Part shown: positions 2,012 through 31,905 of the stretch, piece by piece
Layout: the number at the start of each line of letters is the position of its first letter
Numbering within the stretch: position 1 is the first letter of the stretch
Assembly (NCBI GenBank): GCA_020184695.1
Contig: JAANOX010000243.1
Coordinates: 124,001-188,000, forward strand
Direction: 5' to 3'
DNA length: 64,000 nucleotides
Origin: Histomonas meleagridis 2922-C6/04-290x
Taxonomy: Eukaryota; Protista; Parabasalia
Position numbers and translations under genes: made by a program
The notes under the pieces: generated by a model
Told to the model about the DNA's origin: nothing
Seen by the model: the letters and a program-made list of their open reading frames with translations, nothing else
Database searches by the model: none

Positions 2012-2132
2012 AAAAAAAAAAAAACGAATTTAAAAAGTAAACGTTCATCAAAACATAAAATGCAAAAACTTTCATTTAAATCATTTTTAAAAACAAGTTA
2101 ATGATTCCAAGCAAATATTCGTTATTCGTTTT

Positions 2133-3881
2133 TTACTTCTTTGGTCTTGCTCTAAATACTGTATGAAGTATCTTTTCAACATCTGGAGTAATAACTTTTG
2201 TTGCAGGAGCATCGACAGCAGATTGAATCTTTGCTCTTTCTTTCATTTTATATATCGCATTAATTCTATTTTTCATGGTTTGTTCATTTTCTGGATATGG
2301 ACTACCGCCACCACAAACACATCCTCCTGGGCAAGCTGTTACCTCAATATATTTAATTCCAGCTACCTCAGGATCATTCTTTTCTATTCTTTCCATTAAG
2401 TTTTGTGCTTCATGTAATTGATCAACAGCTGCAAACTTAAACGGTTTCCCATCAATGTTAATTTGGGCCACCCTAATCGTTTTATAACCTCTGATGTTTC
2501 CGAAATCGACTTTTTCAATGTTCTTTCCTGTCACTTTTTGGTATGTTGCCTTAGCTACAGCTTCTGCTAAGCCTCCAGAAGCATAAACGAGTGCAGCATC
2601 ACCAGTACTTTCACCGAAAAGCTTATCAAATTTTGAGTCCTTCAATTTTATGATTGAAATTCCGGCTGTCTTTAACATTTGAACTAATTCTCTAGTAGTT
2701 AGAGCGACATCAGTGTCTTTGATTCCGTTTGTGACGAAATTACCACGTTCAATTTCATCTTTTTTAGCAGTACAAGAACCAATATATACAGTATATATTT
2801 GTTCATTAGCATTGGGTAATTCTCTTGGCTTGGTTTTAGAGTTCTTAAGTAAGCCAGAAATCATTGTAGCTGTAGATCTTGAATTGCTAAGTTGTTTCAT
2901 TATTCCATTTTTACTTTGTTCAACAAAATTAACAAATGCTGGACAATTTGATGAGAATAATGGAAACTTTGCCTTTGGGTCTCGCAACTTTTTAGCTAGT
3001 TGCTCAGCTTCAAGATTTATTAATATATCATTACCTATTGAACCGTCAAAGATATATTTAAAGCCGAGTTGTCGTAGTGCGGTAATGACTTTTCCACCAG
3101 ATAATGTTCCAGCGGGATAACCAAATGCTTCAGATATATCTACAAAAACTGACGGGTCGATTGTACATACTGTGACTCTTTGTGATGGCTTACGAAGCTC
3201 AGATAACACTTCGCGTGCTTGACTGTTTTCTGTCATCGCACCACATGGGCAATATAATGTGCATTGTCCACATTTGACGCAGGTGCTCTTTTCCAACGTG
3301 ACACCTGAAGTTGGTTGTACTAACATATGGTCTCCGCGGTTGGCAAAGTGAATGGATTTTTGCCCAACAATTGATTCGCATGCTCGAACACAACGTCCAC
3401 ATAAAACACATTTGGCTGGATCAAATCGTATACTGTAAGTGGATGAATCAACAGCTTCGGGCGCTGGTTTGTGACGTTCTTTTTCATGAACATTAAATTC
3501 ATAAATAATATCACGGAAAGTACATCGATTATTTGCAATACATGAGGTGCAACGTTCATCATGAGAAGCAAGAAGCATTTCAAGATTGGCACTGACTGCT
3601 TCTTGAACTTTGGTTGATTTTGTATTTACTGTAAGTCCATCATATATTGGAGTGACACATGCTGGTGCAAGCCATGAATTGTTACATTCAACAAGGCAAA
3701 CACGACAAGAAGCACGTTGCGGAAGATTTGGATGATGACAAAGTCTTGGAATTTTAATATTGTTTCTGTCACATAATTCTAAAATTGTTTCTCCTTTCTT
3801 AGCCTCTAGCTTGCGTCCATTTACAGTTACTATTGCATTTCTCAGAGAAAATGAAGAAGTTGTGCTCAAGCTCGTCAGCAT
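2133..3881 (-). CDS. Long-form [FeFe]-hydrogenase-like protein with hydrogenosomal leader and divergent H-cluster pocket
   Basis: Leader MLTSLSTTSSFSLRN. [2Fe-2S] motif (LCHH...CRVC...AC), His-ligated [4Fe-4S] (HDERCTSC...C), two ferredoxin motifs (CVLCGRCVRAC, CVKCGQCTLYCP). H-cluster motifs present but altered: SSNCP, GSCTAKKDE, EVTACPGGCVCGGG. Confidence 0.93.
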   Translation of the reverse strand: MLTSLSTTSSFSLRNAIVTVNGRKLEAKKGETILELCDRNNIKIPRLCHHPNLPQRASCRVCLVECNNSWLAPACVTPIYDGLTVNTKSTKVQEAVSANLEMLLASHDERCTSCIANNRCTFRDIIYEFNVHEKERHKPAPEAVDSSTYSIRFDPAKCVLCGRCVRACESIVGQKSIHFANRGDHMLVQPTSGVTLEKSTCVKCGQCTLYCPCGAMTENSQAREVLSELRKPSQRVTVCTIDPSVFVDISEAFGYPAGTLSGGKVITALRQLGFKYIFDGSIGNDILINLEAEQLAKKLRDPKAKFPLFSSNCPAFVNFVEQSKNGIMKQLSNSRSTATMISGLLKNSKTKPRELPNANEQIYTVYIGSCTAKKDEIERGNFVTNGIKDTDVALTTRELVQMLKTAGISIIKLKDSKFDKLFGESTGDAALVYASGGLAEAVAKATYQKVTGKNIEKVDFGNIRGYKTIRVAQINIDGKPFKFAAVDQLHEAQNLMERIEKNDPEVAGIKYIEVTACPGGCVCGGGSPYPENEQTMKNRINAIYKMKERAKIQSAVDAPATKVITPDVEKILHTVFRARPKK

Positions 3882-3886
3882 TGAAA

Positions 3887-3891
3887 TGTGA
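3887..3891 (-). promoter_or_regulatory. Initiator (Inr) element
   Basis: Sense TCACA 6-10 nt upstream of the ATG; matches the trichomonad Inr TCA(Y)(W). Confidence 0.6.
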
Positions 3892-5231
3892 CTAACAAAA
3901 AGTGGATCAGCTCACTGTCATGTGACCGTTAAGTGCTTTGGTTCCAAAGTACTTTTTTGTAAAGAATGATATAATTATTAGGGTATCCAAATTCAAAAAG
4001 ATCATTTGCTTTCTGTTTTCGTTTAAATCTATTGATCATTTTCATTCGTTGCATAATTTTCTATTTCTTGGCGATTAATTTCTTCTTTATCTTCCGTTTC
4101 TTTATTGATTGAGGTACTCATTGATGATTTTATCATTCCTTTGTTCTTCTGTTTTTAAAAAGATGATAATTCCAACAATTATTAAAATTATTTTAATAGA
4201 AAAACGTATATAATGCCGTGAAAAACCTTTAGACAGACAACAAAAACTTAAATTTATCATAAATTTGTGTATAGTTTGTTAGAAATCCCAAAAAATTAAT
4301 ATTTGAAAAGAAAATCGAGAAGTGAGCAAAAAATAGGAACATTGCAAAAATTACAAATTTAAATCGAAAAAAATTAATAAATATATAATTAAATATGTTC
4401 TCTATGAATAATACCACATTATTAGCTTAAATTATATTAAGGTCTACAAGTTTTTTTCGGCGGTTTAATACAAATGAGATCTGTAGTCAATATTTTATTT
4501 TGTGATTTTCCATTATCATTATTCATTAATGTAAAGAAATTACTATAAATTTGATAATAAGTGGAATATAACACAGATAAATTTATAATAAATAAAATTC
4601 ATAATAGGGTAAGTAAATGGTGAATTAATATATGAAATAAAAAATGAATTTGTTGAAAGTGCTTTATAAAATGATTTTGTTTCTGTTATGCATAAAATTT
4701 CGCCAATATAAATGAATGAGATATATATAAATCAGGTTTAGTAAAAGTTTGTGTTGAAGAAAGACATGCATCAATTACTCCTTTTTTTATATTTAATTCT
4801 CCAACTGTTTCACTTGAATATGTTTCATTTAACAACAATTACTTTCAAATGTTGGGTGAATGTTACACATGAATTAAAATGATTTTTTAATATCATCAAA
4901 ACACGAAAAAACATTGAAATGAATAAAATGTACCTTTTAGTATCAAAAACGAAATTCGATTATACATGTGATGAAAAAATTTCTATTTAATTTCTATTTT
5001 ACATACACTTTATAGAATATCATTCATGCAGTATTTTTAGTTTAGAGAAAATTTTCAGATAAGTAAAATTTTTTCCCTTCCCATACCATTATTATATATT
5101 GAGTTATTTTCATGGTCGAACATGATTGAGTCGGCTTTATGATTATTAATATTTTAAATTCACATTTAAGAATTTTTCTTTTGCAAATTTCAATACACAA
5201 TAAAACGCAAGAAACAATCTCTATATTTTAT

Positions 5232-8200
5232 TTACACAGTTGTTAATTTCGATTCCACTAATTTCCCATCGGATGTACCCCACATAATATGTGGTAACAC
5301 TGGATGGAAAGAACAGAGCGCATTCGTTCCAATATCTTTCAATGTATGAATCACATTTCCATTCCAATCTGTGATTACTGGGAAAGACTTTGTTGGTGCC
5401 AATGACATAAATGGGGACAAAGTATGCACGTCAAAATCATTTAGCATCGAATTAGTATTATCAAATTCGATAACAGATATATCATCAATATTTTCCCAAC
5501 TTACACATTTACCACCATAAGTGCCAGCGAAGAATTTAGTCTTATTATTATTCCCTAAGCACCCAATAATTTTCATAATTTTATCATTTTTAATTTTTTG
5601 TTCTTCAATATTTTGAATGTCATTTGATCGTAAATCCATTGATGTGATTAAACCGCTGTCATAACCGGCCACGCAAACGTTCTCCGAAATTGGGTTCATA
5701 TTGATCGTTGTAATAATTTCATTATTTTTATTTGTTTTGAAAGAAGAAATTAATTTTTGGTATTCGATATCCCATAAATTTATAATACCTGTATTACCTC
5801 TAGCAGTGATAAATTGTTTTTTAGTATTAATTAAAGTTAAAACTAAAGGAAAATTTGTATTCGAATTATCTGATAAATCAGCGAAAAATGAAATTTTAGG
5901 ATTTAAATTGTTCGGATTCCAAACATTAACGAAACCATTTTCAGATCCGATGAATATCAATGAATTATTGTAATCCCAATCACTAATATTAATTGCAGAA
6001 ATTTTTGAACCGATAAATAACTTTTTAATATTTAAATATTTTTCATCAAAATAATAAATGTTATTTTTAGTAGTAGACACAGTTATTGATAAAGTTTTAT
6101 GATCATATTTAATGTTATTAGGAATTTCGGAATTATTAAATTTATATTTAAATGTTTTAACAAGTTTTGTTGTTGGTATATTTGTTAATGTTGGCTGAGG
6201 TAATGTTATAGGTGTTGAAATAACTTTTGTTTCTTCTTTTATTTCCCAATATTTAAATGATATCATTTGTTTTATAAATATATTAAAACATTTTTCATTA
6301 CTTTTTTCGGTATAATTAAATGTCGTTAATATTTGTTTCGATATATTTCTAATTATATTATTCGTATCATTTTGTAATATATTTATTAATTCTATTGATA
6401 ACTTAATACATTTTTGTAATGAGTTTTCTGTTTCAGTAAATATATCTGTAAATGAACAAAGTTTTTTGAAATCTTTCGAATGTTCTTCAAATGAAATTTC
6501 ATTAACATTTAAATAATTGTTAATAATATTTTTAATGGAATTTTTGGTTAAGTTAATTTTAGTATATAAATCTTTTGATTCTAATTGATAATTAGTTAAA
6601 AAGTTCCCTAAAAATATTAAATAATTATATCGAACTAAATATGAAATATCAAAAATTGATTTAAGTGCTAAACAAAACAATTGAACATTAACTTTATCTT
6701 CTGTTTGTATTAAATATGATAATATTGATAATGATATCGATCTAATTTCATAAGAATTATGGAAACAAAATGAAGCGATTTGTATATGTAAACCTAATTC
6801 ATATATAATTTTCGAATCAATTCCATATGAATCAAATATTTTGGATATTAATACTAATGTCCATAATATAAATAATGAATCATTATATGTGTTTAATAAA
6901 TTACTTATTTTACTAATAAATTGTTTAGATGAAAATGTAAATTGTAATGATTCATTATATGGTATAATAAATGATAATATCGCAGAGATCATCGATTTGG
7001 TTATTATCGGAATTTTTGGATCAAATAACTTTTCTTTAAATGTATGAATGTCATCATTTAAATTGATATTATTGATTAAACTTTCATCTGTTTGTAATAT
7101 TGATATACATAAATAACAAAGTGAATGTTTCCACATTTTGAAGTCAATGGAATTGTTATTATTATTTTTAATTAGTATTTTAAATAATTTGGGAAAAATT
7201 GTCGTTTTCGTTAATTTGTTTCGTGCGTTTTGTGATATTGATGCATATTTAGATAATAATATGAAAGAATTATGTAAAAGTTCTTCTGATTTCTCAGGTA
7301 TGTTAAATAATAATGTAATTAATGACGTCGGAATGTCATTTTGTTTACATTCGTTTTTTAAATACATTTCAACGGAATTGATCGTTTGATTAAATATATT
7401 AGTAATAAACCCAAATGATTCTGTCGTGATTTTTGTAATGACAAAGTCTGCTATTGTTTGCCAATTGCCCCATAATTGATGTGTGCTTAAATCTGGCAAT
7501 TCTGGATATGATATTGGATGGACTTGAAAATACTTAAGTAAAAATTGGCATAGTAAAAATTGTCGAAAAAGATATGAAATTAATTCATTGCTACGAAATA
7601 ATCGGCGATATTCTTCAATAGATAAAACATCTGATGCAATTGAATCAATAATTGCTTGAAGTGTTTCTTCAAGACCTTCAATATTAATATCAATGAACTT
7701 TTTCATTGGAAATTTATCAGTGACTATTGTCGTTCGATAATATTGAATAACATGACAAATAATTGCTAACTTAACAGGTGTAAAAATACATGATGTCAAA
7801 AAATCACGTGGTAAATGTGGGTCTTCTGGTAACGTTTCTTCAATATCTGTTGAACATAAACAAAAATAATCTTTCCAGTCATATTCAGTGTTATGTGATG
7901 TGACATTGTTCTGAAAAAGTGACATGCGAGGAATTGGATGTTGACTATTTGATGCGACTTGAAGTGCTCGTAATGCTGCTCCTGCATTAGAACAATCAAA
8001 TATATAGAAAGAGGGAGTCTTAATAGATTCAAATAATGTTCGAATTGGATAATTTTTAAAGATTCCCGTGGGATCTAAACAAGGAATTGAACTTTGGTCA
8101 TGAGGTGGAAACCCATAACCAATGTAATGAAAAAGAATACAGTCACTTGGCACATCGCGCCCATTAACTTTTGCTAAGTTTTTGATGCTTTCAATATTGG

Positions 8201-8672
8201 GATTTACCATATGACGAGAAGAACGGATTTTTGTGGAAAGGCGTGAATAATTTTCATTCATGTAGTTTTTAGCAAAATTGTTGTATTTTAATGGAGGAAT
8301 ACTTGAAACATTTTCCCACATGAAAATGGGAGAACTTGATGTATTTCTTGAACTGCTAACTGAAGATACCATTGTCAATACACACTTTATGTTAGTTTTG
8401 TATTTTTTTGTTTGTAAATGTGAATCATTATTTTCTAAAATATCATACTGATAATCATCAATATCTGGTGATTCTATTGGATGTGTTGTTAAAAAATCCT
8501 GGATTTTGAAAAGATTTAAATTTTGTTGAATGGTTTTAGAATAAATATTTGGCTTATCATCTTCTTCCTCTTCTTCATTAAAACACAAAGAATCATTTGA
8601 ATCATCTGTACTACCGAAAGGTACAATATCTTTAAGATTTACAAAGAAACTCTTTTGCATTTTATTGCTCAT
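5232..8672 (-). CDS. RPTOR: Raptor/KOG1, TORC1 scaffold subunit
   Basis: RNC-domain motifs (ILFHYIGYGFP, FDCSNAG, LPEDPHLPRDFLTSCIFTP), helical middle region and WD40-like C-terminus. First ATG is at 8672; the track used an upstream TTG. Confidence 0.9.
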   Translation of the reverse strand: MSNKMQKSFFVNLKDIVPFGSTDDSNDSLCFNEEEEEDDKPNIYSKTIQQNLNLFKIQDFLTTHPIESPDIDDYQYDILENNDSHLQTKKYKTNIKCVLTMVSSVSSSRNTSSSPIFMWENVSSIPPLKYNNFAKNYMNENYSRLSTKIRSSRHMVNPNIESIKNLAKVNGRDVPSDCILFHYIGYGFPPHDQSSIPCLDPTGIFKNYPIRTLFESIKTPSFYIFDCSNAGAALRALQVASNSQHPIPRMSLFQNNVTSHNTEYDWKDYFCLCSTDIEETLPEDPHLPRDFLTSCIFTPVKLAIICHVIQYYRTTIVTDKFPMKKFIDINIEGLEETLQAIIDSIASDVLSIEEYRRLFRSNELISYLFRQFLLCQFLLKYFQVHPISYPELPDLSTHQLWGNWQTIADFVITKITTESFGFITNIFNQTINSVEMYLKNECKQNDIPTSLITLLFNIPEKSEELLHNSFILLSKYASISQNARNKLTKTTIFPKLFKILIKNNNNNSIDFKMWKHSLCYLCISILQTDESLINNINLNDDIHTFKEKLFDPKIPIITKSMISAILSFIIPYNESLQFTFSSKQFISKISNLLNTYNDSLFILWTLVLISKIFDSYGIDSKIIYELGLHIQIASFCFHNSYEIRSISLSILSYLIQTEDKVNVQLFCLALKSIFDISYLVRYNYLIFLGNFLTNYQLESKDLYTKINLTKNSIKNIINNYLNVNEISFEEHSKDFKKLCSFTDIFTETENSLQKCIKLSIELINILQNDTNNIIRNISKQILTTFNYTEKSNEKCFNIFIKQMISFKYWEIKEETKVISTPITLPQPTLTNIPTTKLVKTFKYKFNNSEIPNNIKYDHKTLSITVSTTKNNIYYFDEKYLNIKKLFIGSKISAINISDWDYNNSLIFIGSENGFVNVWNPNNLNPKISFFADLSDNSNTNFPLVLTLINTKKQFITARGNTGIINLWDIEYQKLISSFKTNKNNEIITTINMNPISENVCVAGYDSGLITSMDLRSNDIQNIEEQKIKNDKIMKIIGCLGNNNKTKFFAGTYGGKCVSWENIDDISVIEFDNTNSMLNDFDVHTLSPFMSLAPTKSFPVITDWNGNVIHTLKDIGTNALCSFHPVLPHIMWGTSDGKLVESKLTTV

Positions 8673-8686
8673 TCCCAAAAAAAAAA

Positions 8687-22199: not shown

Positions 22200-25100
22200 T
22201 TATTCAGAATATTTAATTGGGAAAATAACAATTTTCCCGTTCTTACAAAAAGCGAAGATCAATGATTCCTCAACGAATACTCTCAGATCGATTACTTCTG
22301 AATCTAATTTTGTCTCATTAATTGGTTTGCCAATTTCCAGGTCGAACGCCTCAAACAAATAAACAAATCCATCCTCGTCAGCGAAGACAACGAAATCGAT
22401 TCCATCGTATAATCTTTTGAATGTTGTCATCGATACAATTCTTGACTTCACTTCTTTCGTTTTAAGAAGTTTCCCGTTGATATTGAACAAATTCAGTCGG
22501 TGTTCAACTTCTGTCCTATAAATCATGATTTGGACGACGACAAATCCGAATGATTGCGTAATGCACATTAGCGATGGACTTCCATCAAGTTCTCTGGTTT
22601 CGAATATATTTGGCTTACTTAGCTGGCAAAACAGAAGTGAGTTATCTCTCGTTCCACAAATTAGTGCATCGAAAATTGTTGATAATGAAACGCATTGAAT
22701 TGATTCTCTGAACGAAGAAACCGAATAACTATACACGCCATTCTTGTATACTGCTACCGCAGCATCTTTCGCTGATATTGCAAACCATTTTTCATGATAT
22801 GATATTGTTACAATATCTAATAATGAAGATATAACATCCCTAATACTTTCATTTTGCTTTATAATCACATCAGTATGATTGTTATCGATATAAATTACGT
22901 TATTATTTTCAGTAATAATTGGTGGAATATCTAAATCAGCAGAACCTTTTGAAAACACTTGACATTGCTTATCAAAAAGAGAGCATACATTGTCAGCATT
23001 ACTTGACTTAAGTTTCATTGGTGATTTTTGTGTATTTACATGAATTTGGTTAAAATTTTTAAACACCGATGAGTCGACCGTTACTGTCCTAAACAAACCG
23101 TTAACCTCCAAAACCGAAATTTGGAATTTTGTCTCTTTTTTCAATACGTTAACCGAACAAACCTCCGCACAATCGTTATAAGTAATATTCACTTGTTCAT
23201 TAATTAATGAAACATTTTGTTTGTAATTAGGATCTCTTTTTGGATGTGGTTTCCCAAAGAATAATTGTGGAGGAATTTGTCCCACATTTTCTAATAGACT
23301 TTCAATTCCTTCTTGAGGTGTATCGTCGAGCGGTTTTTCCCAAACGGTCTCGTACATTTCTGACTTGTAAACGTTATCTGCCTTAACGGACTCCGGCGGT
23401 TTTTGCTTATATCCCCAAAGTAAATCAATCCAATTGTTAATATTTTGAGAGACATAATCTGATTCTAACGCCTTTCGATGTATATATATAAAGTTTTCGG
23501 GTGCTACTGAAGGATCACCAGCCCAAGGAGGTAATAAAACATTTTCTACATTCCCTTCTTCAGTTCTTCCTAAATCGAATGAATTAATATTTATTAAAAC
23601 TTCAGGCTCGAAATAAAATTCTGGAATTAGTTCTCTATAATCATTAATATTCGAAGTTACGAAATCGAATGAATCCTTAAACGATCTAAATAATCTTGCC
23701 GCATGATCGAATCTTCCACTTTGTATTTTAATATGTTGAGTTGTAAAAGGCTCAAGTCGAATTAACCATAGATATACTGTTAAAGGGTTTACAGGACCAC
23801 AAGAATATAGAAATGGTTCACCTCCAATTTTTTGTAATTCGTATGCTTTTTCTTTTAATTCATTTAATCTTTCAGGATTAATAGCACCTATAGGTTTTGA
23901 TAAATCTCTATAAATTTTCGGGTTATTTAAATCTAATTCAGTCGATGTATAATCACTTAATACCCAAGGAAAGATTGGATATTGTGATGCATCATTAAAA
24001 GAACGTCCACTAAATATATTAATATACATTAAATATTCGAAATTTGATATTTTCCCATGTACCCATTTATATGTTAAATTTTGTTCATCAAAAAATCGTG
24101 GAAACATATATTGTTGTAAATGTAATTGATTAATGTTTTTCATCTTATTAATTTGTTGTGTAATTGTTCTAAATTTATTGCCTTGAAAACGTATATATAT
24201 CGAGTCATTCGTTTTGGTAAATATTTCGAATCCTTGCCATTTATGATAATGAGTTCGATATAATACATAATCAATATCTGATGATGGGATAATTTTTGCA
24301 TGACCATTATAACAGATAATTAATTTATCTTTACCAAATTGTATGATTCCGGGAATATTCTTTTTAATTTTTACTATTTCACATTCTAAAAATTGATTTC
24401 CTTCTAAATTATTAAGTTTTTCATCATTTTCTTCATTTTCTTCTTTGTTATTGTTTTTATTTCTTGAAAATAATATCGCTAAAGGTGTTTCCTTCGGTGA
24501 ATTATTTTGTATTTCAATTAATTGTTGTGCTGTTAATCGAGAATCACCACAATCTCTCAGTAATGAAGCACTTAAATGTTTATCGAGTTGATATTTCTTA
24601 ATAATTTTAAATGGACAAAATGATGAACAATATGAATTATATCGAACGTAACCGAATTTCTTCTTTTCTAATAATTTATTCCATGGAGCTCTATCGATAG
24701 TTAATAAACTTGATAAATGATTCCATTTACGTATATTCTTTTTAGAGTTTTGGATTGAGATTTGATTACGAATGTTTATATTATTTCTTAATTCTTGTAT
24801 TAAATTAATTGGATAATCAGGTAAAGCATTTTTCTTTATAATCGACTGCAAAAATTTCTTATAATCATCGATTAATAAAACGTCAACATTTTTAGCAAAT
24901 GATTGAATAAAATCAAATGCATTTAATGCATTATAATGTTTTGATTTTGTATATTTATAATAAAAATGTTTTGCATTAATTTGTCCAAAATCTTTAAAAT
25001 AATTCAAATTTTTCGAATGATCTTTCATATATTTCGGATCTGCTTTCCATATAAATGCTGCTAAACAATAAGATAAATCAGAATATTGTTGTAACTTATA

Positions 25101-28100
25101 TTTAAATATTAATCGAATTGTATGTTTAGCTAAATCTAAATCTAACCAAATATTATCATCAGTAATTCGTAAGCTAAAGATATATAAAGTTTGACAATTT
25201 AATAAATCTTCTAATTTTTTATCAAGTGTTTCAATTTCGAATTTTGTATTATAATTTTCTTCATTAATAGATGTTTCAATTTCAGGTATACTTTGATCAA
25301 TAAAAGTTTCTTCTGATGATATTAATACACTATTTCTTTGGAAATCCTTTAAATCAAAAGTTAAAGGATGAAAATTATTCTTATCAAATGAAAATGAAGA
25401 AGAATTTTGGAATGAAGAATTACTTGAATCGAAACTAAAGTTTGAACTTCGTGGTGAAAGTTCGACATTATCGAAAGATATATTATCATTAAATTCTTCA
25501 TTATTATTCATATAATCATTTTCATATATACCAAAAGGACTTTTAAATTTATATACATTAATTATCTTTGGTATGTAAGTTTCTGAAGGTCTAAAGAATA
25601 TAAATTGTTGTAACATTCGTATTAATATTACCCAAGAAAATCGTGGAATTTCTTTACATTGACACATTCTTATTAAAACTTGATGTTGAATTTGTTCAGT
25701 ATCTATTGACATGACTTTACCTATTATACAAATAGCATAATATAAATCTTGCCAATTAGAATAAAATGCACTTATTAAAAATTCGATAACTTCTTTTTGA
25801 TTTTCATGATTAATTTGATATAACATCATTACTGGATATATTACTGATGAATTCTTGATAAAATAACTTTGTTTCTTTTCAGCTTTTCTGATTAAAAATA
25901 AAATCGATTCAATACCTTGCTTAATAGCTATATAAGATAATATAGGTAATAAATGTGGCATATCTTTATTCATCATTTCAATTAATGATTCGAAATGAAT
26001 TAATGTTAATGAAATATCAGTTGTATATTTAATTATTATATCTAAATAATATGATATATGAAATATGATATTATAATCTAAACTTTTTGCTATTATAAAA
26101 CATCGTATTAATTGATATGTAATTTTTTCATCCGGAATTCTTGTTAAATGACATAATAAATGAAAATATCCACCAAAGTCATGATAATTAATAATTATCT
26201 TATTCACTAATAAATTTTCTAAAAATTTTAATAAATCAATTTTTTGATCAATATCAATTTCTTTAACATCTTTATCGACATCAATTAATATATATTGAAT
26301 TAATGCAATGAAATCTTCATTAGTAAAATTAATATGTGTTATTGATATTAATATTTCGATTAAATATTTCCTACATTCATTAATATTTAAGTCAACTTTA
26401 TTATTATTAATGATAAAGTTTTTATTATAATAATTATAAATTATATATAAAAACCATTGAAATGTTTTATTTTTGATTATCAAATTATTATATGAAGGAA
26501 ATAATGTTCGAGACCAATGTTTTAATATTTTAATATGTGACTTAGAATCAGCTAACATCCATAAATCAATATTCATTAAAATATTATCAATTAATTGTAA
26601 TTGTAATGAATTTATTATAATCACATCCATTAAATTAAAAAAATGTGAATAAAGATTAAAATTAATTGATGATTTACCTGATTCACTTAATAAAAATGAT
26701 ATCATTGCAAATCCATCAATATTATAAAATGCTATTTGAGGTTTTTCACTTAATGAAAATAAATTATTTAATAATTGTATTGAATAATCAGGTAAAAAAG
26801 TTAATAATTTCCCATCAATTAAAGGTGTATCAAATTGTCCAAAAATTGGTAATATTATATTTAACTTACAAAAGTTAAGTAATAAATCATAAAATGAACT
26901 TCCTTTCTTTGTGACTATATTATTATGTTGAATTGTAATTGATTCATCATGAAATAATGGTCGAAACGCTAAATGATCACCAATATCTTGAGGCTCATAA
27001 GCAAATATAATATTCTTCTTTATAGATGTTAATGAAGGTCGAGGTCCATAATCATAAAATGAAGAAATTTCATCATCAATTAATTGTTCACTTAATATAA
27101 ATACTCCAATATTTGGTGGTGATTCAGGTAATTTAGAATCAGGAAATGGAGAATTCATAAAACATTGGATAGAATTAGATGGTATAAAACCACTAAATTT
27201 AGTTACTTTCTTAAGTATTGTTCCATTAATATATACACTAACGATACTATTAGAGCCATTTTGTTTATAAGTTATAGTTATAAAACTCCAAACTTTTTTA
27301 ATGCTTTGTAAATCAAAATTACCAAAGAATGAATCTTTACTTGTTTCAACTTGTACATGTAATACTACTCCAAATATTGAAATAGAAAATGAATTTTTTT
27401 GATTATCATTCATATATAAAATATTATGTTTAAAGTTTGAATCATTTTGGGTTAAATATAACCAAAATGAAAAACTAAATCCATCAATTATCGAATTATT
27501 TGTTATACCTTTAATTTCGATTGAACGTTTTGGTAATAAAGGAATTGAAGCTGAAGGAATATTACGTGAATTAATTAATATTGAATTAAATGATTTTAAT
27601 ATTAATTCATGAAAAGGACTTAAAAAATTAAGTTTAATTGGACATAATAAAGAGACAAATCTTTGTACAGATGCAACTGATGATACAACAGAAGAAATTT
27701 GTACATAAATTTTCAAGAATTTTTCAACTTTATTAGTGATTTCAGAATCAATTTCTTCTAATTGTCTCCATTCATCAATTCTATCAACTATAAACAAATC
27801 AAGTTCACCTTCATGACATTTAATACAATTATCTGTTGAAAATTTACATAAATTAGAAATGAAATCAAATGCTTCATTAAATGATTTAGAATTAATAAAT
27901 ATTCGTGAAAAAGAACATAATACTTGTGGTTGATATATAATAAAATTTGGTAATGTAACTGATAATCCTTGTCCTGCTAAAACTTCAATTAATTTCTCCA
28001 TCACTTTACTTTTAGGATTATCTTTATACATTTCCATAATTGCTGTTTCAACTGAAATTAACTCAGTTCCAATAATAGTATGATCAGTAGAATTACATGC

Positions 28101-30236
28101 AATAAATGTAACTAAATTCATTAATACATCTTCCGATAATTTTAATTCTAATATATTTTTACAAAATGTTGGAATTAATTGTTTCATAAAAAAAATCTTT
28201 TTATATAATAAAGAATTATTAAATGTGATTAAAATGTCTAAAATGATATCATTTGATATTTCTTTTGGTTCTTTACATGAAGAAATGATTAAATCTTGAA
28301 TATAATTTATGAATTTCTTTTGTGTCGATTCATTTCCAATATCATAACTTCGTAAAATATATGTTAAATGTGGTAATATTTCTTTACGAATATCTCTTTC
28401 ATATAATAACATTAAAAATAAATCAATTAATTTATCATTAAATAAAAATGATTGATCTTCAAACTTAAAAATGACTTCAACTAAAAAACTTAAAATTGTT
28501 TTTTGTGCAATATTAATTATTTCAAGATCACATTTCCGATATAAAATCATTGTTGTTAATAATCCTAAAGTTATATTTTCAAGTCTTGTTGATATTAAAT
28601 CATTATCAATCGTAAATAATCGTTGTACAGTTTCAATATATAAATATGGATATTTAGTCATATCATTTAATACTTTCATAATAAAAAATGGTTGATCTCT
28701 TAATACAATATTTAATGAATAATATCGTAATGTATTTAAATATTTAAAATTTTCTTCATCATTTTTATCAAAAATTGTAAATTTAGGATCAAAGATAAAA
28801 TCATTACATATTAAATCGAATCGGAAGTTAATATTTGGATATTTTTTTTTAATGACTTTAATAAAATATAAGATAATCGCTAATATATCATATACAGAAT
28901 CATTTTTATCAAATTTCAACAAATTAATTTGTGATAATGATGTAGAAAATAATGATGCAACATTTTCAATATTTTTTAATATAACTTCTTTAACTTTCCT
29001 TAATTCATCATATATTTTCTCTGAAAATAATTCTTTGAATTTCTTTTTTGTTGGAATTTGTATACTTTTACTTTCATTATCAAATTGATAATTCTTATTT
29101 CCAATATAGAAATAATCTTCGATTTTATAATCAATATCTAATTCAATTGGTTCATTGTTTGATTCAAAACTTAAAAATTTCGTCATAGAACATGAATTAA
29201 ATAAATAATATATAATCATTTCAAATAATGGCGGATCTAATGCATCTGATTTAATTTGATCGGATAAAAGTTGGAAAAATTGTATCATTTCTTTCGATTG
29301 ATATGTCGAATCTGCAATAATATCACGTCTACTTAATATATCAGTAATTATTTTAAGTACTTCATCAATAAATTTTTCTGGTAAATTATAAGTCGAATGA
29401 TTCATTGATTCATTTTGTGAATGTTCTAATATTTGAATCAATGATAGAATAAATGATACAAATCTTTGCTGTTGATCATTAATAGCATTTTTTGCATCTT
29501 GATAATTTTGATCTATATTAAGATGTTCTACATCTGATTTATAATTTTCTTCTATCTTTTTTATGATGTTTTCTTGTTCAATAATGATTTCTTTGGAATT
29601 AGCTAAAAACTGATTAAAGAATTGAATAAAAATATTGAAAGTGGAATTAGGAAGTGTCGAATTGTTAAGATAAAAGGCTGTCAGTGGACTTAATAGTTCG
29701 GAAAATGGAATGGTTTCAGTTGGATTTTTTAAAATTTCGGAGAAAACTGATACAAAAGCTGAAATAATCATTTGATATAAAGCTCTTGTTTCTTTTAAAT
29801 TTTTTGTATCGCGTGTATCTTTTGAATTAGTATCATTAATTTGTGTGCAGGCAATAATAAATGCATTTAACAAAAGTGGAATATATTCAATAGCTTCATT
29901 TTTTTTGTATTGTAGATTCCACGCAATCCAAGAATTTAATAAGTAGATACAATTATAAAAAGCAGGAGTTTGATTATAATCTAACGAATTTATTTTTTTA
30001 GGTTGAAATGGAAATGAATATTTATGTTCTCTTAGAACAGAAAGATAGTTGTCTTTATTGATTTCTTTGGAAATAATACTGATCTCTTGTTTTGAACTAT
30101 ATGGAATTGAATTTAGATCAACATCCTGAAAAAGTGTAAGAATTTGCTTTTTACATGTAAACATTGTTGACAATAACCTAATACATATTTTATCTGGGGT
30201 AAGAAGCTCTTCAGTGTTTTGGGTTTTGTCAAGCAT
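22200..30236 (-). CDS. BEACH-domain (Beige/BEACH) protein, PH-BEACH-WD40
   Basis: KWVHGKISNFEYLMYINIFSGRSFNDASQYPIFPWVLSDY, RELIPEFY, WIDLLWGYKQ and GQIPPQLF; ConA-like segment mid-protein; WD40-like C-terminus. Confidence 0.95.
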   Translation of the reverse strand: MLDKTQNTEELLTPDKICIRLLSTMFTCKKQILTLFQDVDLNSIPYSSKQEISIISKEINKDNYLSVLREHKYSFPFQPKKINSLDYNQTPAFYNCIYLLNSWIAWNLQYKKNEAIEYIPLLLNAFIIACTQINDTNSKDTRDTKNLKETRALYQMIISAFVSVFSEILKNPTETIPFSELLSPLTAFYLNNSTLPNSTFNIFIQFFNQFLANSKEIIIEQENIIKKIEENYKSDVEHLNIDQNYQDAKNAINDQQQRFVSFILSLIQILEHSQNESMNHSTYNLPEKFIDEVLKIITDILSRRDIIADSTYQSKEMIQFFQLLSDQIKSDALDPPLFEMIIYYLFNSCSMTKFLSFESNNEPIELDIDYKIEDYFYIGNKNYQFDNESKSIQIPTKKKFKELFSEKIYDELRKVKEVILKNIENVASLFSTSLSQINLLKFDKNDSVYDILAIILYFIKVIKKKYPNINFRFDLICNDFIFDPKFTIFDKNDEENFKYLNTLRYYSLNIVLRDQPFFIMKVLNDMTKYPYLYIETVQRLFTIDNDLISTRLENITLGLLTTMILYRKCDLEIINIAQKTILSFLVEVIFKFEDQSFLFNDKLIDLFLMLLYERDIRKEILPHLTYILRSYDIGNESTQKKFINYIQDLIISSCKEPKEISNDIILDILITFNNSLLYKKIFFMKQLIPTFCKNILELKLSEDVLMNLVTFIACNSTDHTIIGTELISVETAIMEMYKDNPKSKVMEKLIEVLAGQGLSVTLPNFIIYQPQVLCSFSRIFINSKSFNEAFDFISNLCKFSTDNCIKCHEGELDLFIVDRIDEWRQLEEIDSEITNKVEKFLKIYVQISSVVSSVASVQRFVSLLCPIKLNFLSPFHELILKSFNSILINSRNIPSASIPLLPKRSIEIKGITNNSIIDGFSFSFWLYLTQNDSNFKHNILYMNDNQKNSFSISIFGVVLHVQVETSKDSFFGNFDLQSIKKVWSFITITYKQNGSNSIVSVYINGTILKKVTKFSGFIPSNSIQCFMNSPFPDSKLPESPPNIGVFILSEQLIDDEISSFYDYGPRPSLTSIKKNIIFAYEPQDIGDHLAFRPLFHDESITIQHNNIVTKKGSSFYDLLLNFCKLNIILPIFGQFDTPLIDGKLLTFLPDYSIQLLNNLFSLSEKPQIAFYNIDGFAMISFLLSESGKSSINFNLYSHFFNLMDVIIINSLQLQLIDNILMNIDLWMLADSKSHIKILKHWSRTLFPSYNNLIIKNKTFQWFLYIIYNYYNKNFIINNNKVDLNINECRKYLIEILISITHINFTNEDFIALIQYILIDVDKDVKEIDIDQKIDLLKFLENLLVNKIIINYHDFGGYFHLLCHLTRIPDEKITYQLIRCFIIAKSLDYNIIFHISYYLDIIIKYTTDISLTLIHFESLIEMMNKDMPHLLPILSYIAIKQGIESILFLIRKAEKKQSYFIKNSSVIYPVMMLYQINHENQKEVIEFLISAFYSNWQDLYYAICIIGKVMSIDTEQIQHQVLIRMCQCKEIPRFSWVILIRMLQQFIFFRPSETYIPKIINVYKFKSPFGIYENDYMNNNEEFNDNISFDNVELSPRSSNFSFDSSNSSFQNSSSFSFDKNNFHPLTFDLKDFQRNSVLISSEETFIDQSIPEIETSINEENYNTKFEIETLDKKLEDLLNCQTLYIFSLRITDDNIWLDLDLAKHTIRLIFKYKLQQYSDLSYCLAAFIWKADPKYMKDHSKNLNYFKDFGQINAKHFYYKYTKSKHYNALNAFDFIQSFAKNVDVLLIDDYKKFLQSIIKKNALPDYPINLIQELRNNINIRNQISIQNSKKNIRKWNHLSSLLTIDRAPWNKLLEKKKFGYVRYNSYCSSFCPFKIIKKYQLDKHLSASLLRDCGDSRLTAQQLIEIQNNSPKETPLAILFSRNKNNNKEENEENDEKLNNLEGNQFLECEIVKIKKNIPGIIQFGKDKLIICYNGHAKIIPSSDIDYVLYRTHYHKWQGFEIFTKTNDSIYIRFQGNKFRTITQQINKMKNINQLHLQQYMFPRFFDEQNLTYKWVHGKISNFEYLMYINIFSGRSFNDASQYPIFPWVLSDYTSTELDLNNPKIYRDLSKPIGAINPERLNELKEKAYELQKIGGEPFLYSCGPVNPLTVYLWLIRLEPFTTQHIKIQSGRFDHAARLFRSFKDSFDFVTSNINDYRELIPEFYFEPEVLININSFDLGRTEEGNVENVLLPPWAGDPSVAPENFIYIHRKALESDYVSQNINNWIDLLWGYKQKPPESVKADNVYKSEMYETVWEKPLDDTPQEGIESLLENVGQIPPQLFFGKPHPKRDPNYKQNVSLINEQVNITYNDCAEVCSVNVLKKETKFQISVLEVNGLFRTVTVDSSVFKNFNQIHVNTQKSPMKLKSSNADNVCSLFDKQCQVFSKGSADLDIPPIITENNNVIYIDNNHTDVIIKQNESIRDVISSLLDIVTISYHEKWFAISAKDAAVAVYKNGVYSYSVSSFRESIQCVSLSTIFDALICGTRDNSLLFCQLSKPNIFETRELDGSPSLMCITQSFGFVVVQIMIYRTEVEHRLNLFNINGKLLKTKEVKSRIVSMTTFKRLYDGIDFVVFADEDGFVYLFEAFDLEIGKPINETKLDSEVIDLRVFVEESLIFAFCKNGKIVIFPIKYSE

Positions 30237-30528: not shown

Positions 30529-31905
30529 TTAGACTACGTTCATAGACCTATCAGTAAAATGTGTATGTAAATATTTGTGTGCTTCATGACTGCCCGGCTC
30601 TCCTAAGTTCATTCTTTGATATAATTCCTTAATTTGTCGGTTTTGATGAGAACATTTGCCAGTTAACGACTCATCAATCTTATAAACAGCTTCAACGCGA
30701 CTTCCAATTTGTTTCTTAGTCTTAGCTCGTGTTGAACCACCGCCACAGATACAACCGCCGGGGCACGCCATAACTTCAATGAACTTAACGTTCGCCACGT
30801 CAGGTGATTTCGATTTAACTTTTTCTAACAATTTCATTGCGTTAAGGATTCCTTGTGCCACCGCAACGCCGACTTCTTCACCATTGATGTTAACAGGACT
30901 AATCTTAATGCCATTCTCAAAACCTCTGACAGATTTCACATGAACATCTGGCATTTCAGTCTTGGTTGCATATTTATAAGCAGAACGAATTGCCGCTTCC
31001 ATAACACCACCAGATGCACAGAAAATAGCGCCAGCTCCTGTGCATTCTGAATATGGATCATCAAATGGAGTATCAGGAAGATTCTTGAAATCAATCTTAT
31101 GCTTCTTGATCATTTTCATGATTTCGCGTGTTGTAAGAACAATGTCTGTTTCGCCATTTAATTGTGGACGACGTATTTCATCTTTCTTGGCTGTACATGG
31201 CATTATGGCAACATTAACAACGCTCTTTCGTGGAAGACCTTTATTCTTTACAAAGTCATTAATGATAGCAGAACTGAGCATTCCAGCTGGAGATCTACAT
31301 GTAGAAAGATTTGGAATGAATTCTGGAGCACTTTGTTCGACATAGTTAACCCATGCAGGGCAACAGGATGTAAGCATTGGAAGTGGTCCTGTTCCTTTTG
31401 TAAGTCGATTAACAAATTCTGCAGCTTCTTCAACAATTGTTTGATCTGCGCCATAGTTTGTGTCAAACACATATTGGAACCCAAGGCGCTTCATTGCAGT
31501 AACCATTTTTCCGGTACTAATTGTTCCAAATGGTAAACCAAGTGCATCACTAAGACTAATACGAATAGCTGGAGCTGTTTGACAAATGGTTACCCTGCCT
31601 TGTGGATTCTTGAAAATTGATTCCATCTCTTCTATTGAATCTTTTTCTCGAATAGCTGCTGTTGGGCAAACAAGAGTACATTGACCACATTTAATGCAAT
31701 GTGTATCTTGTAGTAGTTTTCCTGATACAGTTCCTACAACTTTCTTTCCATTAACATTGTATAACTTGAGTATGCTTTGTCCAGCAACATTGGTGCAAGC
31801 TTTAACACATTGGGAACATCCAATGCACTTGGAGGGATCAATAAAAATCCCATTTGTGCTACTGTCTATGGACATTGAGATTCTTCTCGAAAAAGAAGAA
31901 AGCAT
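30529..31905 (-). CDS. Short-form hydrogenosomal [FeFe]-hydrogenase with a canonical H-cluster
   Basis: Leader MLSSFSRR; CIGCSQCVKAC and CIKCGQCTLVCP; canonical TSCCPAW, MPCTAKKDE and EVMACPGGCICGGG. Confidence 0.96.
   Translation of the reverse strand: MLSSFSRRISMSIDSSTNGIFIDPSKCIGCSQCVKACTNVAGQSILKLYNVNGKKVVGTVSGKLLQDTHCIKCGQCTLVCPTAAIREKDSIEEMESIFKNPQGRVTICQTAPAIRISLSDALGLPFGTISTGKMVTAMKRLGFQYVFDTNYGADQTIVEEAAEFVNRLTKGTGPLPMLTSCCPAWVNYVEQSAPEFIPNLSTCRSPAGMLSSAIINDFVKNKGLPRKSVVNVAIMPCTAKKDEIRRPQLNGETDIVLTTREIMKMIKKHKIDFKNLPDTPFDDPYSECTGAGAIFCASGGVMEAAIRSAYKYATKTEMPDVHVKSVRGFENGIKISPVNINGEEVGVAVAQGILNAMKLLEKVKSKSPDVANVKFIEVMACPGGCICGGGSTRAKTKKQIGSRVEAVYKIDESLTGKCSHQNRQIKELYQRMNLGEPGSHEAHKYLHTHFTDRSMNVV

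What the first reader, a model, noticed from the sequence alone, without database searches (positions are those of the whole stretch)
2133..3881. [FeFe]-hydrogenase with intact Fe-S wiring but a rewritten catalytic pocket
Seen, comparing with the canonical paralogue at 30.5-31.9 kb: TSCCP>SSNCP, MPCTAKK>GSCTAKK, EVMAC>EVTAC, APAIR>DPSVF, EEAAEF>LEAEQL, RSP>RST and GAIFC>ALVY. All four [4Fe-4S]H cysteines, the L2 lysine and all accessory-cluster ligands remain. Established (CpI numbering recalled): these positions correspond to the proton-transfer Cys299 and Glu282 and to Met353, Met497, Ala230, Pro324 and Phe417. Cys299, Met353 and Met497 are also replaced in bacterial sensory HydS enzymes. 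Inference: a hydrogenosomal H2/O2 sensor or a non-catalytic electron-relay subunit (for example for NuoE/NuoF) rather than an H2 producer.
Basis: partly seen in the sequence, partly recalled or inferred. Interest (0 to 1): 0.7.

Follow-up and report, generated by a model that had tools for sequence, protein, structure and literature searches.

The report
Detuned hydrogenase paralogue in Histomonas
The poultry parasite Histomonas meleagridis keeps, under strong selection, a full-length hydrogenase copy whose iron-sulfur wiring is intact but whose proton path and di-iron pocket are rebuilt much as in bacterial "sensory" hydrogenases, so it is probably a slow or specialised enzyme, not the main hydrogen producer.

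Summary
Window 2133-3881 (-) is an intact 582-aa M3-type [FeFe]-hydrogenase gene of Histomonas meleagridis. All 16 accessory-cluster ligands, the four H-cluster cysteines and Lys358 are kept.

It is not a decaying copy. A second copy on another contig of the same genome gives dN/dS 0.04. Both belong to a parabasalid clade with 100/100 support (12 cluster representatives, including two Tritrichomonas foetus proteins, none from T. vaginalis). Transcript-like contigs cover the gene.

C298N and E282Q are published loss-of-proton-transfer mutants. M353G with M497S/T is the TmHydS pattern, and a sister subclade has the TamHydS pattern. The resemblance is best read as convergent: the clade sits inside the parabasalid group-A radiation and lacks the PAS domain, the C-terminal cysteine motif and the group-D relay glutamate.

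Best reading (about 0.5): a hydrogenosomal, H-cluster-bearing but slow or biased hydrogenase. Main rival: a cofactor-less Fe-S relay. A signalling sensor is unsupported.

I found no description of this clade, but Smutna et al. 2022 was unreadable. The scan also noted a similar hydrogenase homologue elsewhere in this genome (s1-367336).

The parts
2133..3881 (-). Complete CDS of the non-canonical M3 [FeFe]-hydrogenase paralogue (582 aa plus stop)
   Evidence: AF2 model pLDDT 91.6, TM 0.90 to CpI and to HydA of HydABC.
3882..3891 (-). Initiator-like TCACATTTCA directly upstream of the ATG
   Evidence: Sequence read. That it resembles the parabasalid Inr (TCA+1) is from my own knowledge, not tested.
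3837..3881 (-). Putative hydrogenosomal presequence MLTSLSTTSSFSLRN (aa 1-15)
   Evidence: It extends beyond the CpI N-terminus. It has the same ML...RN form as the T. vaginalis 64-kDa enzyme and most parabasalid homologues. Residues 1-12 have pLDDT below 50. Import itself is inferred.
3615..3830 (-). [2Fe-2S] domain (Fer2_4) with ligands C48, C59, C62, C75
3483..3587 (-). His-ligated [4Fe-4S] (FS4C) motif: H107, C111, C114, C120
3231..3431 (-). 2x[4Fe-4S] ferredoxin-like domain (FS4A/FS4B), eight Cys kept
2307..3173 (-). H-domain (Fe_hyd_lg_C)
3156..3158 (-). A230D (Asp242). Asp or Glu stands here in 11 of 12 clade II members and Asp in 2 of 5 clade I members.
   Evidence: A230 lies near the 2Fe subcluster and is Ser in the uptake-biased CpII (PMC5506873).
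3000..3002 (-). E282Q (Gln294) at the mouth of the canonical proton pathway. E279 and S319 are kept; R286 is Lys.
   Evidence: E282Q mutant data.
2940..2954 (-). L1 motif SSNCP (C299N; the ligand C300 is kept)
   Evidence: C298N mutant data.
2871..2873 (-). P324T
2760..2780 (-). L2 motif GSCTAKK (M353G, P354S; C355, K358 and K359 kept)
   Evidence: TmHydS has Gly at M353.
2556..2588 (-). VYASGGLAEAV: F417V, G418Y, V423L, M424A, A427V (lining of the distal-iron and gas cavity)
   Evidence: The group-D relay Glu would sit at V423; here it is Leu.
2319..2345 (-). L3 motif EVTACPGGC (M497T; C499 and C503 kept)
2136..2303 (-). Shortened, diverged C-terminal 'small-subunit-like' tail. It has no Cys and has lost the (R/K)xSHEN motif.
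   Evidence: No PF02256 hit. Columns 547-558. His columns.
30529..31905 (-). Canonical M2-type paralogue used as comparator (TSCCP, MPCTAKK, EVMAC). It is not part of the feature itself.

Best explanation
The gene encodes an intact, transcribed and strongly constrained paralogue of the parabasalid 64-kDa (M3) hydrogenosomal [FeFe]-hydrogenase. It belongs to an old parabasalid clade with two kinds of residues.

Kept: every Fe-S ligand, the four H-cluster cysteines and, in this subclade, Lys358.

Replaced: the first relay (C299N) and the mouth (E282Q, R286K) of the canonical proton pathway, the two methionines that frame the di-iron site (M353G, M497T), and residues lining the pocket and gas cavity (A230D, F417V, V423L, A427V and others).

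Most likely mechanism (inferred). The protein is imported into the hydrogenosome and receives its F-clusters. It still receives a [2Fe] subcluster from HydEFG. It then behaves like bacterial HydS-type enzymes: proton release from the bridgehead amine is hindered, turnover is slow, reduced states are stabilised, and bias and inhibitor sensitivity are altered, possibly favouring H2 oxidation. It exchanges electrons through its intact cluster chain with ferredoxin or NuoE/NuoF. Bulk H2 evolution is left to the canonical M2 enzymes, such as the one at 30529-31905.

The HydS-like pocket most likely arose inside the eukaryotic group-A lineage, that is, by convergence.
For: Shown:
- The ORF is intact with M3 architecture.
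- The predicted fold matches CpI and HydA of HydABC (TM 0.90, pLDDT 91.6).
- All ligands are kept.
- The substitutions are mapped to CpI numbering.
- C298N and E282Q are published proton-transfer-deficient variants.
- M353G/M497S is the TmHydS pattern and M353S/M497L the TamHydS pattern. Both enzymes bind an H-cluster and turn over slowly. The Histomonas subclade has G/T(S) and the T. foetus subclade S/L.
- The uptake-biased CpII has A230S/I268T/M353T.
- A second copy in the same genome gives dN/dS 0.042 at dS about 1.1.
- P0002 and P0003 are 81% identical in protein while their synonymous sites are saturated.
- Clade II has 100/100 support and is nested, together with canonical parabasalid M3 and M2 enzymes, against bacterial A6 outgroups.
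- Transcript-like contigs from 4 runs of 2 studies cover the gene. Their only break falls on the single 32-nt stretch shared with the paralogue.
- The presequence resembles that of the T. vaginalis 64-kDa enzyme.
Against: - Cofactor content cannot be read from sequence.
- A230D and A413D put two carboxylates next to a dianionic cofactor.
- K358 is Arg or His in four clade II members (P0006, P0012, P0024; P0008). P231 is Lys or Arg in P0002/P0003.
- One clade-I-like fragment (P0278) has lost all four H-cluster cysteines, which shows that relatives can do without the H-cluster.
- No alternative proton relay of the group-D kind is present, because V423 is Leu.
- E279 and S319 are kept, unlike in HydS.
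- No group C/D sequence could be put in the tree, so convergence rests on domain architecture, identity levels and nesting.
- The runs are labelled 'RNA?' (a guess). That they are RNA is my inference from poly(A) ends and gaps over intergenic DNA.
Confidence: 0.5

Rival explanations
1. Cofactor-less pseudo-hydrogenase. The protein keeps only its [4Fe-4S]H and F-clusters. It serves as an Fe-S electron relay or scaffold, for example as the HydA-like partner of hydrogenosomal NuoE/NuoF in NADH:ferredoxin exchange. This would parallel the way complex I NuoG kept the wiring of a hydrogenase-like ancestor.
For: - The cluster ligands are perfectly conserved while the pocket is rewritten.
- Two new carboxylates lie in the pocket, and K358 and P231 are variable within the clade.
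- The clade-I-like fragment P0278 has lost all H-cluster cysteines.
- The best sequence and fold match is HydA of the HydABC complexes.
- The databases searched show no canonical M3 enzyme from H. meleagridis or T. foetus, so these proteins would be the only M3 partners available.
- 64-kDa hydrogenases and the 51-kDa NADH dehydrogenase rose together in an H. meleagridis proteome (which paralogues were detected is not known).
Against: - The bridging C503 is invariant in clade II and K358 is kept in this subclade.
- The replacement residues are not random. They repeat the combinations seen in HydS enzymes that do bind the H-cluster.
- There is no evidence of any physical association with NuoE/NuoF.
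Confidence: 0.27
2. A true H2 (or O2) sensor. An H-cluster reports gas levels and passes the signal on to a regulatory partner, as proposed for bacterial group C/D HydS.
For: The pocket resembles HydS. Bulkier residues at V423L and A427V could restrict gas access, as in regulatory [NiFe] enzymes; that comparison is from my own knowledge and is an inference.
Against: There is no PAS domain or any other output domain, and no C-terminal 4-Cys cluster. The hydrogenosome has no genome, and no signalling route from it is known. The full three-domain electron-transfer chain is kept, which a sensor would not obviously need.
Confidence: 0.08
3. A normally efficient H2-evolving hydrogenase that uses a different, unrecognised proton route, for example through Asp242 (the A230D residue) or Asp428.
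For: A conserved new carboxylate at position 230 appears in both non-canonical clades. C299D shows that a carboxylate can replace the thiol relay. E279 and S319 are kept.
Against: Loss of both framing methionines lowers activity in known enzymes: M353L gives 15% H2 production. All characterised natural enzymes with this pocket are slow. Canonical M2 enzymes are present in the same genome for bulk H2 evolution.
Confidence: 0.08
4. A decaying duplicate under relaxed selection, or an annotation artefact.
For: The NCBIfam group-A score is below the cut-off (357.6 against 405.95). Branches in the clade are longer than in canonical clades.
Against: dN/dS is 0.042 between the two copies. The ORFs are intact in at least 12 lineages. 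The model is confident, and transcript-like contigs cover the gene.
Confidence: 0.02

Closest known systems
Parabasalid 64-kDa (M3) hydrogenosomal [FeFe]-hydrogenase (T. vaginalis '64kDa iron hydrogenase', P0010); bacterial group A6 / HydA of HydABC
   Same: Same domain order and length, and the same presequence style. 47% identical. The same 16 accessory ligands and four H-cluster cysteines. Best NCBIfam model is A6. Best PDB match by sequence and by fold is T. kivui HydA.
   Different: About 30 columns that are invariant in canonical enzymes are replaced. They include C299, E282, M353, M497, A230 and F417. The C-terminal SSU-like motif is lost. The score falls below the NCBIfam group-A cut-off.
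Bacterial putative sensory [FeFe]-hydrogenases: TmHydS (group C, M2f) and TamHydS (group D, M2e)
   Same: C299 is replaced. M353 is Gly/Ser and M497 is Ser/Thr/Leu, in the same pairings. Slow catalysis is therefore expected.
   Different: M3 rather than M2e/f architecture. No PAS domain, no C-terminal Cx2Cx4Cx16C motif, and no Glu at the V423 position. E279 and S319 are kept. The protein nests with the parabasalid group-A-like enzymes. It is a eukaryotic protein with an organelle-targeting presequence.
CpII of Clostridium pasteurianum (H2-uptake-biased group A enzyme)
   Same: Second-sphere changes at A230, I268 and M353. Clade I and some clade II members have M353T or M353S.
   Different: In CpII the changes described are confined to the second sphere, whereas here the proton relays C299 and E282 are replaced as well. 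CpII is an M2-type enzyme lacking FS2 and FS4C.
Engineered variants CaHydA C298N and CpI E282Q (PDB 6GM8)
   Same: Identical residue replacements at the two positions.
   Different: Here they occur naturally, in combination and under purifying selection, together with many other pocket changes.
Nar1/NARF (hydrogenase-like CIA proteins)
   Same: An H-domain homologue that keeps the cluster cysteines but lacks the catalytic Cys299 (Nar1 features are from my own knowledge).
   Different: Nar1 proteins are cytosolic and lack the M3 F-domain. This protein has the full M3 domain set and a presequence. No Nar1 sequence was compared here.

Membership tests
[FeFe]-hydrogenase, group A (prototypical, M3) | H-domain fold plus the M3 F-domain ([2Fe-2S], His-ligated [4Fe-4S], 2x[4Fe-4S]) | tested here: met
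   Pfam domains, ligands, Foldseek TM 0.90 to CpI and HydA
[FeFe]-hydrogenase, group A (prototypical, M3) | Four cysteines binding [4Fe-4S]H, including the bridging Cys503, and Lys358 | tested here: met
   C313, C370, C517, C521 and K373
[FeFe]-hydrogenase, group A (prototypical, M3) | L1 TSCCP with the proton-relay Cys299; L2 MPCxxKxxE; L3 ExMxCxxGCxxG | tested here: not met
   The motifs read SSNCP, GSCTAKKDE and EVTACPGGCVCG. C299, M353, P354 and M497 are replaced.
[FeFe]-hydrogenase, group A (prototypical, M3) | Canonical proton pathway C299-E279-S319-E282-R286 | tested here: not met
   The positions read N, E, S, Q, K: two of five kept and one conservative change
[FeFe]-hydrogenase, group A (prototypical, M3) | Score above the curated NCBIfam cut-off (TIGR02512 405.95; NF040763 765) | tested here: not met
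   357.6 and 503.5 bits. The canonical paralogue reaches 478.5 on TIGR02512.
[FeFe]-hydrogenase, group A (prototypical, M3) | Phylogenetic descent from group A / A6-like enzymes | tested here: met
   Nested with the canonical parabasalid M3 and M2 clades against bacterial A6 (100/99 and 98/94)
Sensory [FeFe]-hydrogenases, groups C and D (HydS) | Cys299 absent; M353 and M497 replaced by small or hydroxyl residues | tested here: met
   N, G and T, compared with PMC8163306
Sensory [FeFe]-hydrogenases, groups C and D (HydS) | All canonical proton-pathway residues missing | tested here: not met
   E279 and S319 are retained
Sensory [FeFe]-hydrogenases, groups C and D (HydS) | M2e/M2f architecture with a C-terminal Cx2Cx4Cx16C cluster motif (plus a PAS domain in group C) | tested here: not met
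   M3 N-terminus, no PAS hit, and no Cys after residue 523
Sensory [FeFe]-hydrogenases, groups C and D (HydS) | Group-D alternative relay Glu (TamHydS E252, the CpI V423 position) | tested here: not met
   Leu438 here, and Leu/Ile/Val throughout clade II
Sensory [FeFe]-hydrogenases, groups C and D (HydS) | Phylogenetic membership of group C or D | not tested
   No group C/D sequence with a usable reference was available for the tree. Nesting among parabasalid group-A-like enzymes argues against membership.
Sensory [FeFe]-hydrogenases, groups C and D (HydS) | Binds an H-cluster, with slow turnover and low CO sensitivity | not testable with these tools
   Needs maturation, FTIR and activity assays
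Nar1/NARF hydrogenase-like proteins | Cytosolic, no M3 F-domain, no [2Fe] subcluster | tested here: not met
   The full M3 F-domain and an organellar-type presequence are present. Cofactor content is not testable here.

The most novel reading that the evidence does not exclude
Parabasalid hydrogenosomes evolved their own HydS-like hydrogenase from a catalytic ancestor, independently of bacteria. It would be an H-cluster protein whose slow, H2-responsive redox state gates electron flow between NADH (NuoE/NuoF), ferredoxin and the canonical hydrogenases. That would make it the first organellar H2-sensing or H2-recycling [FeFe] enzyme. In Histomonas and Tritrichomonas it would have replaced the catalytic 64-kDa enzyme altogether.
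Probability: 0.15. Interest if true: 0.8.

Novelty: new variant of a known kind. Interest (0 to 1): 0.58.

Why it matters
Work on [FeFe]-hydrogenases currently turns on how the protein shell tunes the H-cluster. The natural comparators are a handful of bacterial group C/D enzymes. This clade offers an independent natural experiment:
- The same pocket solutions (G/S-T and S/L pairs, loss of Cys299) were reached from a different starting scaffold.
- Half of the canonical proton path is still in place.
- A conserved new Asp stands at position 230.

For parasite biology, the only 64-kDa-type hydrogenases found for Histomonas and Tritrichomonas foetus in the databases searched are non-canonical. 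Models of hydrogenosomal NADH/ferredoxin/H2 coupling drawn from T. vaginalis may therefore not carry over. The proteins are easy to express and to mature in vitro, so the question can be tested directly.

Tried and rejected
- Decaying pseudogene: rejected, dN/dS 0.042.
- Private substitutions: rejected, they define a clade with 100/100 support.
- Different species or strain as the source of the 93% hit: rejected. The canonical paralogue maps at 100% to GCA_020186115.1 contig WSYJ01000029.1, and the 93% copy lies on WSYJ01000186.1 of the same assembly, so the two are paralogues.
- Internal transcription start near 3500, suggested by a contig break: rejected. The break falls exactly on the only 32-nt run identical to the paralogue, a k-mer graph effect.
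- Copy of the group-D alternative proton relay: rejected, V423 is Leu.
- A T. vaginalis orthologue or other distant members: none found by the word search, the clade profile search or the exhaustive H-domain profile search.
- dN/dS for P0002/P0003: not estimable. Synonymous sites are saturated, with GC 31% against 60%.
- Single or double origin of the two non-canonical clades: unresolved. The AU test gives p = 0.40, so one origin is not rejected.
- Reading Smutna et al. 2022: not held. The papers that cite it give no sequence detail.
- A tree that includes bacterial group C/D or Nar1: no referenced sequences were available, so this step was left out.
Full report
**What is there.** Window 2133..3881 on the minus strand is one uninterrupted ORF of 582 codons. 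Pfam finds an N-terminal [2Fe-2S] domain, the His-ligated [4Fe-4S] motif of NuoG-type proteins, a 2x[4Fe-4S] ferredoxin domain and the [FeFe]-hydrogenase H-domain (214 bits). This is the M3 architecture. There is no hit to the C-terminal small-subunit-like domain, which the paralogue at 30529..31905 has. The best solved relatives by sequence are HydA of the electron-bifurcating HydABC complexes and CpI (E 3e-102 to 1e-84). An AlphaFold2 model built on 69 homologues is confident (mean pLDDT 91.6, pTM 0.91; only residues 1-12 are disordered). It superposes on T. kivui HydA and on CpI at TM 0.90.

**Source organism.** The canonical paralogue of the window is found at 100% identity on contig WSYJ01000029.1 of Histomonas meleagridis GCA_020186115.1.

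**The observation.** HMMER alignments to CpI chains give the numbering, and a 40-sequence alignment gives the residue states. R286K is an additional change. E279, S319, C300, C355, C499, C503, K358 and E361 are kept. All 16 ligands of the four accessory clusters are kept.

An unbiased scan looked for columns at least 92% conserved in 26 canonical sequences but changed in at least two thirds of the clade. It returns 30 columns.
- T/I268G, N269S, A272N, T275L, W303F and T356
- V423L, M424A, A427V and F493Y
- the (R/K)xSHEN motif of the C-terminal tail

The remodelling therefore covers the di-iron pocket, the start and the mouth of the proton pathway, the cavity in front of the distal iron, and the C-terminal wrap.

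**Not private and not decaying.** The best database hit (P0001, 93% identical) lies on another contig of the same assembly. It sits in a duplicated two-gene block together with a Raptor-like gene. Between the two copies the Nei-Gojobori estimates are dN 0.048, dS 1.14 and dN/dS 0.042. By region the ratio is 0.015 in the F-domain and 0.065 in the H-domain. All the key pocket residues are identical except the Q325 position.

A careful ML tree (LG+C20, 44 rows) gives these results:
- The protein falls in a clade of 12 cluster representatives with 100/100 support. The clade includes T. foetus 'Iron hydrogenase 1' and 'HndC' and eight metagenomic sequences.
- A second non-canonical clade of six, also 100/100, includes a third H. 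meleagridis protein, P0023.
- Both group with the canonical 64-kDa enzymes (98/94) inside a parabasalid clade, against bacterial A6 enzymes (100/99).
- The order of the three M3 groups is unresolved. One origin of the two non-canonical clades is not rejected (AU p = 0.40).

A clade-profile word search and an exhaustive H-domain profile search of 1.84 billion representatives added no member to the first clade and no T. vaginalis sequence. In the same searches the only M3-type proteins named from H. meleagridis or T. foetus are non-canonical. The orthologue pair P0002/P0003 is 81% identical in protein although synonymous sites are saturated and GC differs (31% against 60%). Their contigs carry parabasalid-type neighbours.

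**Expression.** Five small public runs from two studies hold the gene. Contigs from the four runs that were laid cover genic stretches and leave intergenic gaps. Some carry poly(A)/poly(T) loose ends at neighbouring genes, so I take them to be transcript assemblies, although the tool labels them only 'RNA?'. They cover 2118-3501 and 3474 to about 4300. The single break is at 3472-3503, which is exactly the longest run (32 nt) identical to the paralogue. Its depth there is higher than on either side, as expected if both copies are expressed. A proteome study of H. meleagridis detected two '64 kDa iron hydrogenases' from different contigs. I could not link them to particular genes.

**Location.** The first 15 residues, MLTSLSTTSSFSLRN, precede the point where CpI begins. 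They have the ML...R-N form of the T. vaginalis 64-kDa enzyme and of nearly all parabasalid homologues. That this form is the hydrogenosomal presequence comes from my own knowledge of the system. Import is inferred, not shown.

**What the changes should do.**
- Saturation mutagenesis of CaHydA found that only Asp can replace this cysteine. C298N was among the inactive clones, below 14% of wild type (PMC3485046).
- CpI E282Q keeps 8% of H2 evolution and HydA1 E144Q keeps 0.4%. The glutamine blocks water access, whereas Ala or Asp are tolerated (PMC6226526).
- The natural protein combines both changes, so the canonical proton route is blocked at its first and last steps.
- M353 and M497 are Gly and Ser in TmHydS and Ser and Leu in TamHydS. 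Both enzymes bind an H-cluster, turn over slowly and show altered inhibitor behaviour (PMC8163306).
- The Histomonas subclade has Gly with Thr or Ser. The T. foetus subclade has Ser with Leu. Clade I has Thr with Leu.
- M353T together with A230S and I268T marks the uptake-biased CpII, and M353L lowers H2 production to 15% (PMC5506873).

**Differences from HydS.**
- The architecture is M3, not M2e/f.
- There is no PAS domain and no C-terminal four-cysteine motif.
- The group-D relay glutamate (TamHydS E252, the CpI V423 position by the primer context and the paper's statement) is Leu here.
- E279 and S319 are retained.
- A carboxylate at position 230 is conserved in both non-canonical clades.

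Given the nesting in the tree, the resemblance to HydS is best read as convergence. No group C/D sequence could be placed in the tree, so this is not directly tested.

**Reading.** The most likely account (about 0.5) is a hydrogenosomal protein that still carries an H-cluster but is a slow, detuned hydrogenase and is not the main H2 producer. The main rival (about 0.27) is a protein without the di-iron subcluster that serves as an Fe-S relay, perhaps with NuoE/NuoF. In its favour:
- two carboxylates have been introduced into the pocket
- K358 is Arg or His in four clade members, including the two T. foetus proteins
- a related fragment (P0278) has lost all four H-cluster cysteines
- no canonical M3 partner is apparent in these species

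A signalling sensor has no anatomical support. An efficient enzyme with a hidden proton route is possible but unlikely. A pseudogene is excluded.

**Novelty.** The sequences are in public databases under generic names. In the searchable literature I found no description of a eukaryotic hydrogenase clade with this pocket. Smutna et al. 2022, on a cytosolic H2-uptake hydrogenase of T. vaginalis, could not be read. No T. vaginalis sequence falls in this clade, and this protein has a presequence, so the two are probably different things, but that is not settled. The scan holds another first-stage note on a hydrogenase homologue with a remodelled di-iron pocket on another piece of this genome (s1-367336), probably one of the paralogues found here.

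Noticed in passing
window 5232-8678 (-) with 2133-3881 (-); L001 1560-4347 and 5992-7757: The hydrogenase gene and its Raptor-like neighbour (Raptor_N plus WD40) form a two-gene block. The block is duplicated on another contig of the same assembly, at 84% and 72% nucleotide identity; the intergenic DNA cannot be aligned.
   Followed up: partly
P0023 (H. meleagridis, 596 aa; not in the window): A third non-canonical M3 paralogue in the same species (C299S, M353T, A230S), in a separate clade with 100/100 support. No canonical M3 enzyme from H. meleagridis or T. foetus appeared in any search.
   Followed up: partly
P0278 (374-aa metagenomic fragment, clade-I-like C-terminus HRPGF): All four H-cluster cysteine positions are replaced (D, L, T, A), so this relative is fully degenerate. 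It may be a true pseudo-enzyme or a pseudogene.
   Followed up: no
L003 5001-6743 and L005 227-1969: The orthologues P0002 and P0003 are 81% identical in protein and share their downstream neighbours, but the loci have 31% and 61% GC. This is an extreme compositional split between related uncultured parabasalids.
   Followed up: no
window 3882-4319: Transcript-like contigs run 80-440 nt upstream of the ATG, past the initiator-like TCACAT at -11 and at lower depth. This may be a long 5' UTR, an upstream transcript or read-through; it is unexplained.
   Followed up: no
window 2152 and 2477: The four 2023 runs carry C>T and T>C, giving R577K and I469V. Both changes match the residue of the paralogous copy, which suggests strain polymorphism or gene conversion.
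   Followed up: partly
window 2583 and 2760: The 2013 run's contig has TAT>TAG (Tyr433 to stop) and a 1-nt deletion, at depth below 4. These are most likely sequencing errors of that low-depth data set.
   Followed up: no
P0271 (Cyanophora paradoxa EukProt model, 4122 aa): One predicted protein holds seven hydrogenase H-domains, all with the canonical Cys299. It is probably a tandem gene array merged into one gene model.
   Followed up: no
P0372 cluster (Megasphaera, 813 aa, 209 members, named 'phosphate acetyltransferase'): A bacterial fusion protein whose H-domain has C299A and M353T, so it is another natural non-canonical hydrogenase domain under a misleading name.
   Followed up: no
window 22200-30236 (-): A giant 2678-aa ORF lies directly beside the canonical hydrogenase gene. 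By its C-terminal sequence it looks like a BEACH/WD40-type protein; I ran no family scan on it.
   Followed up: no
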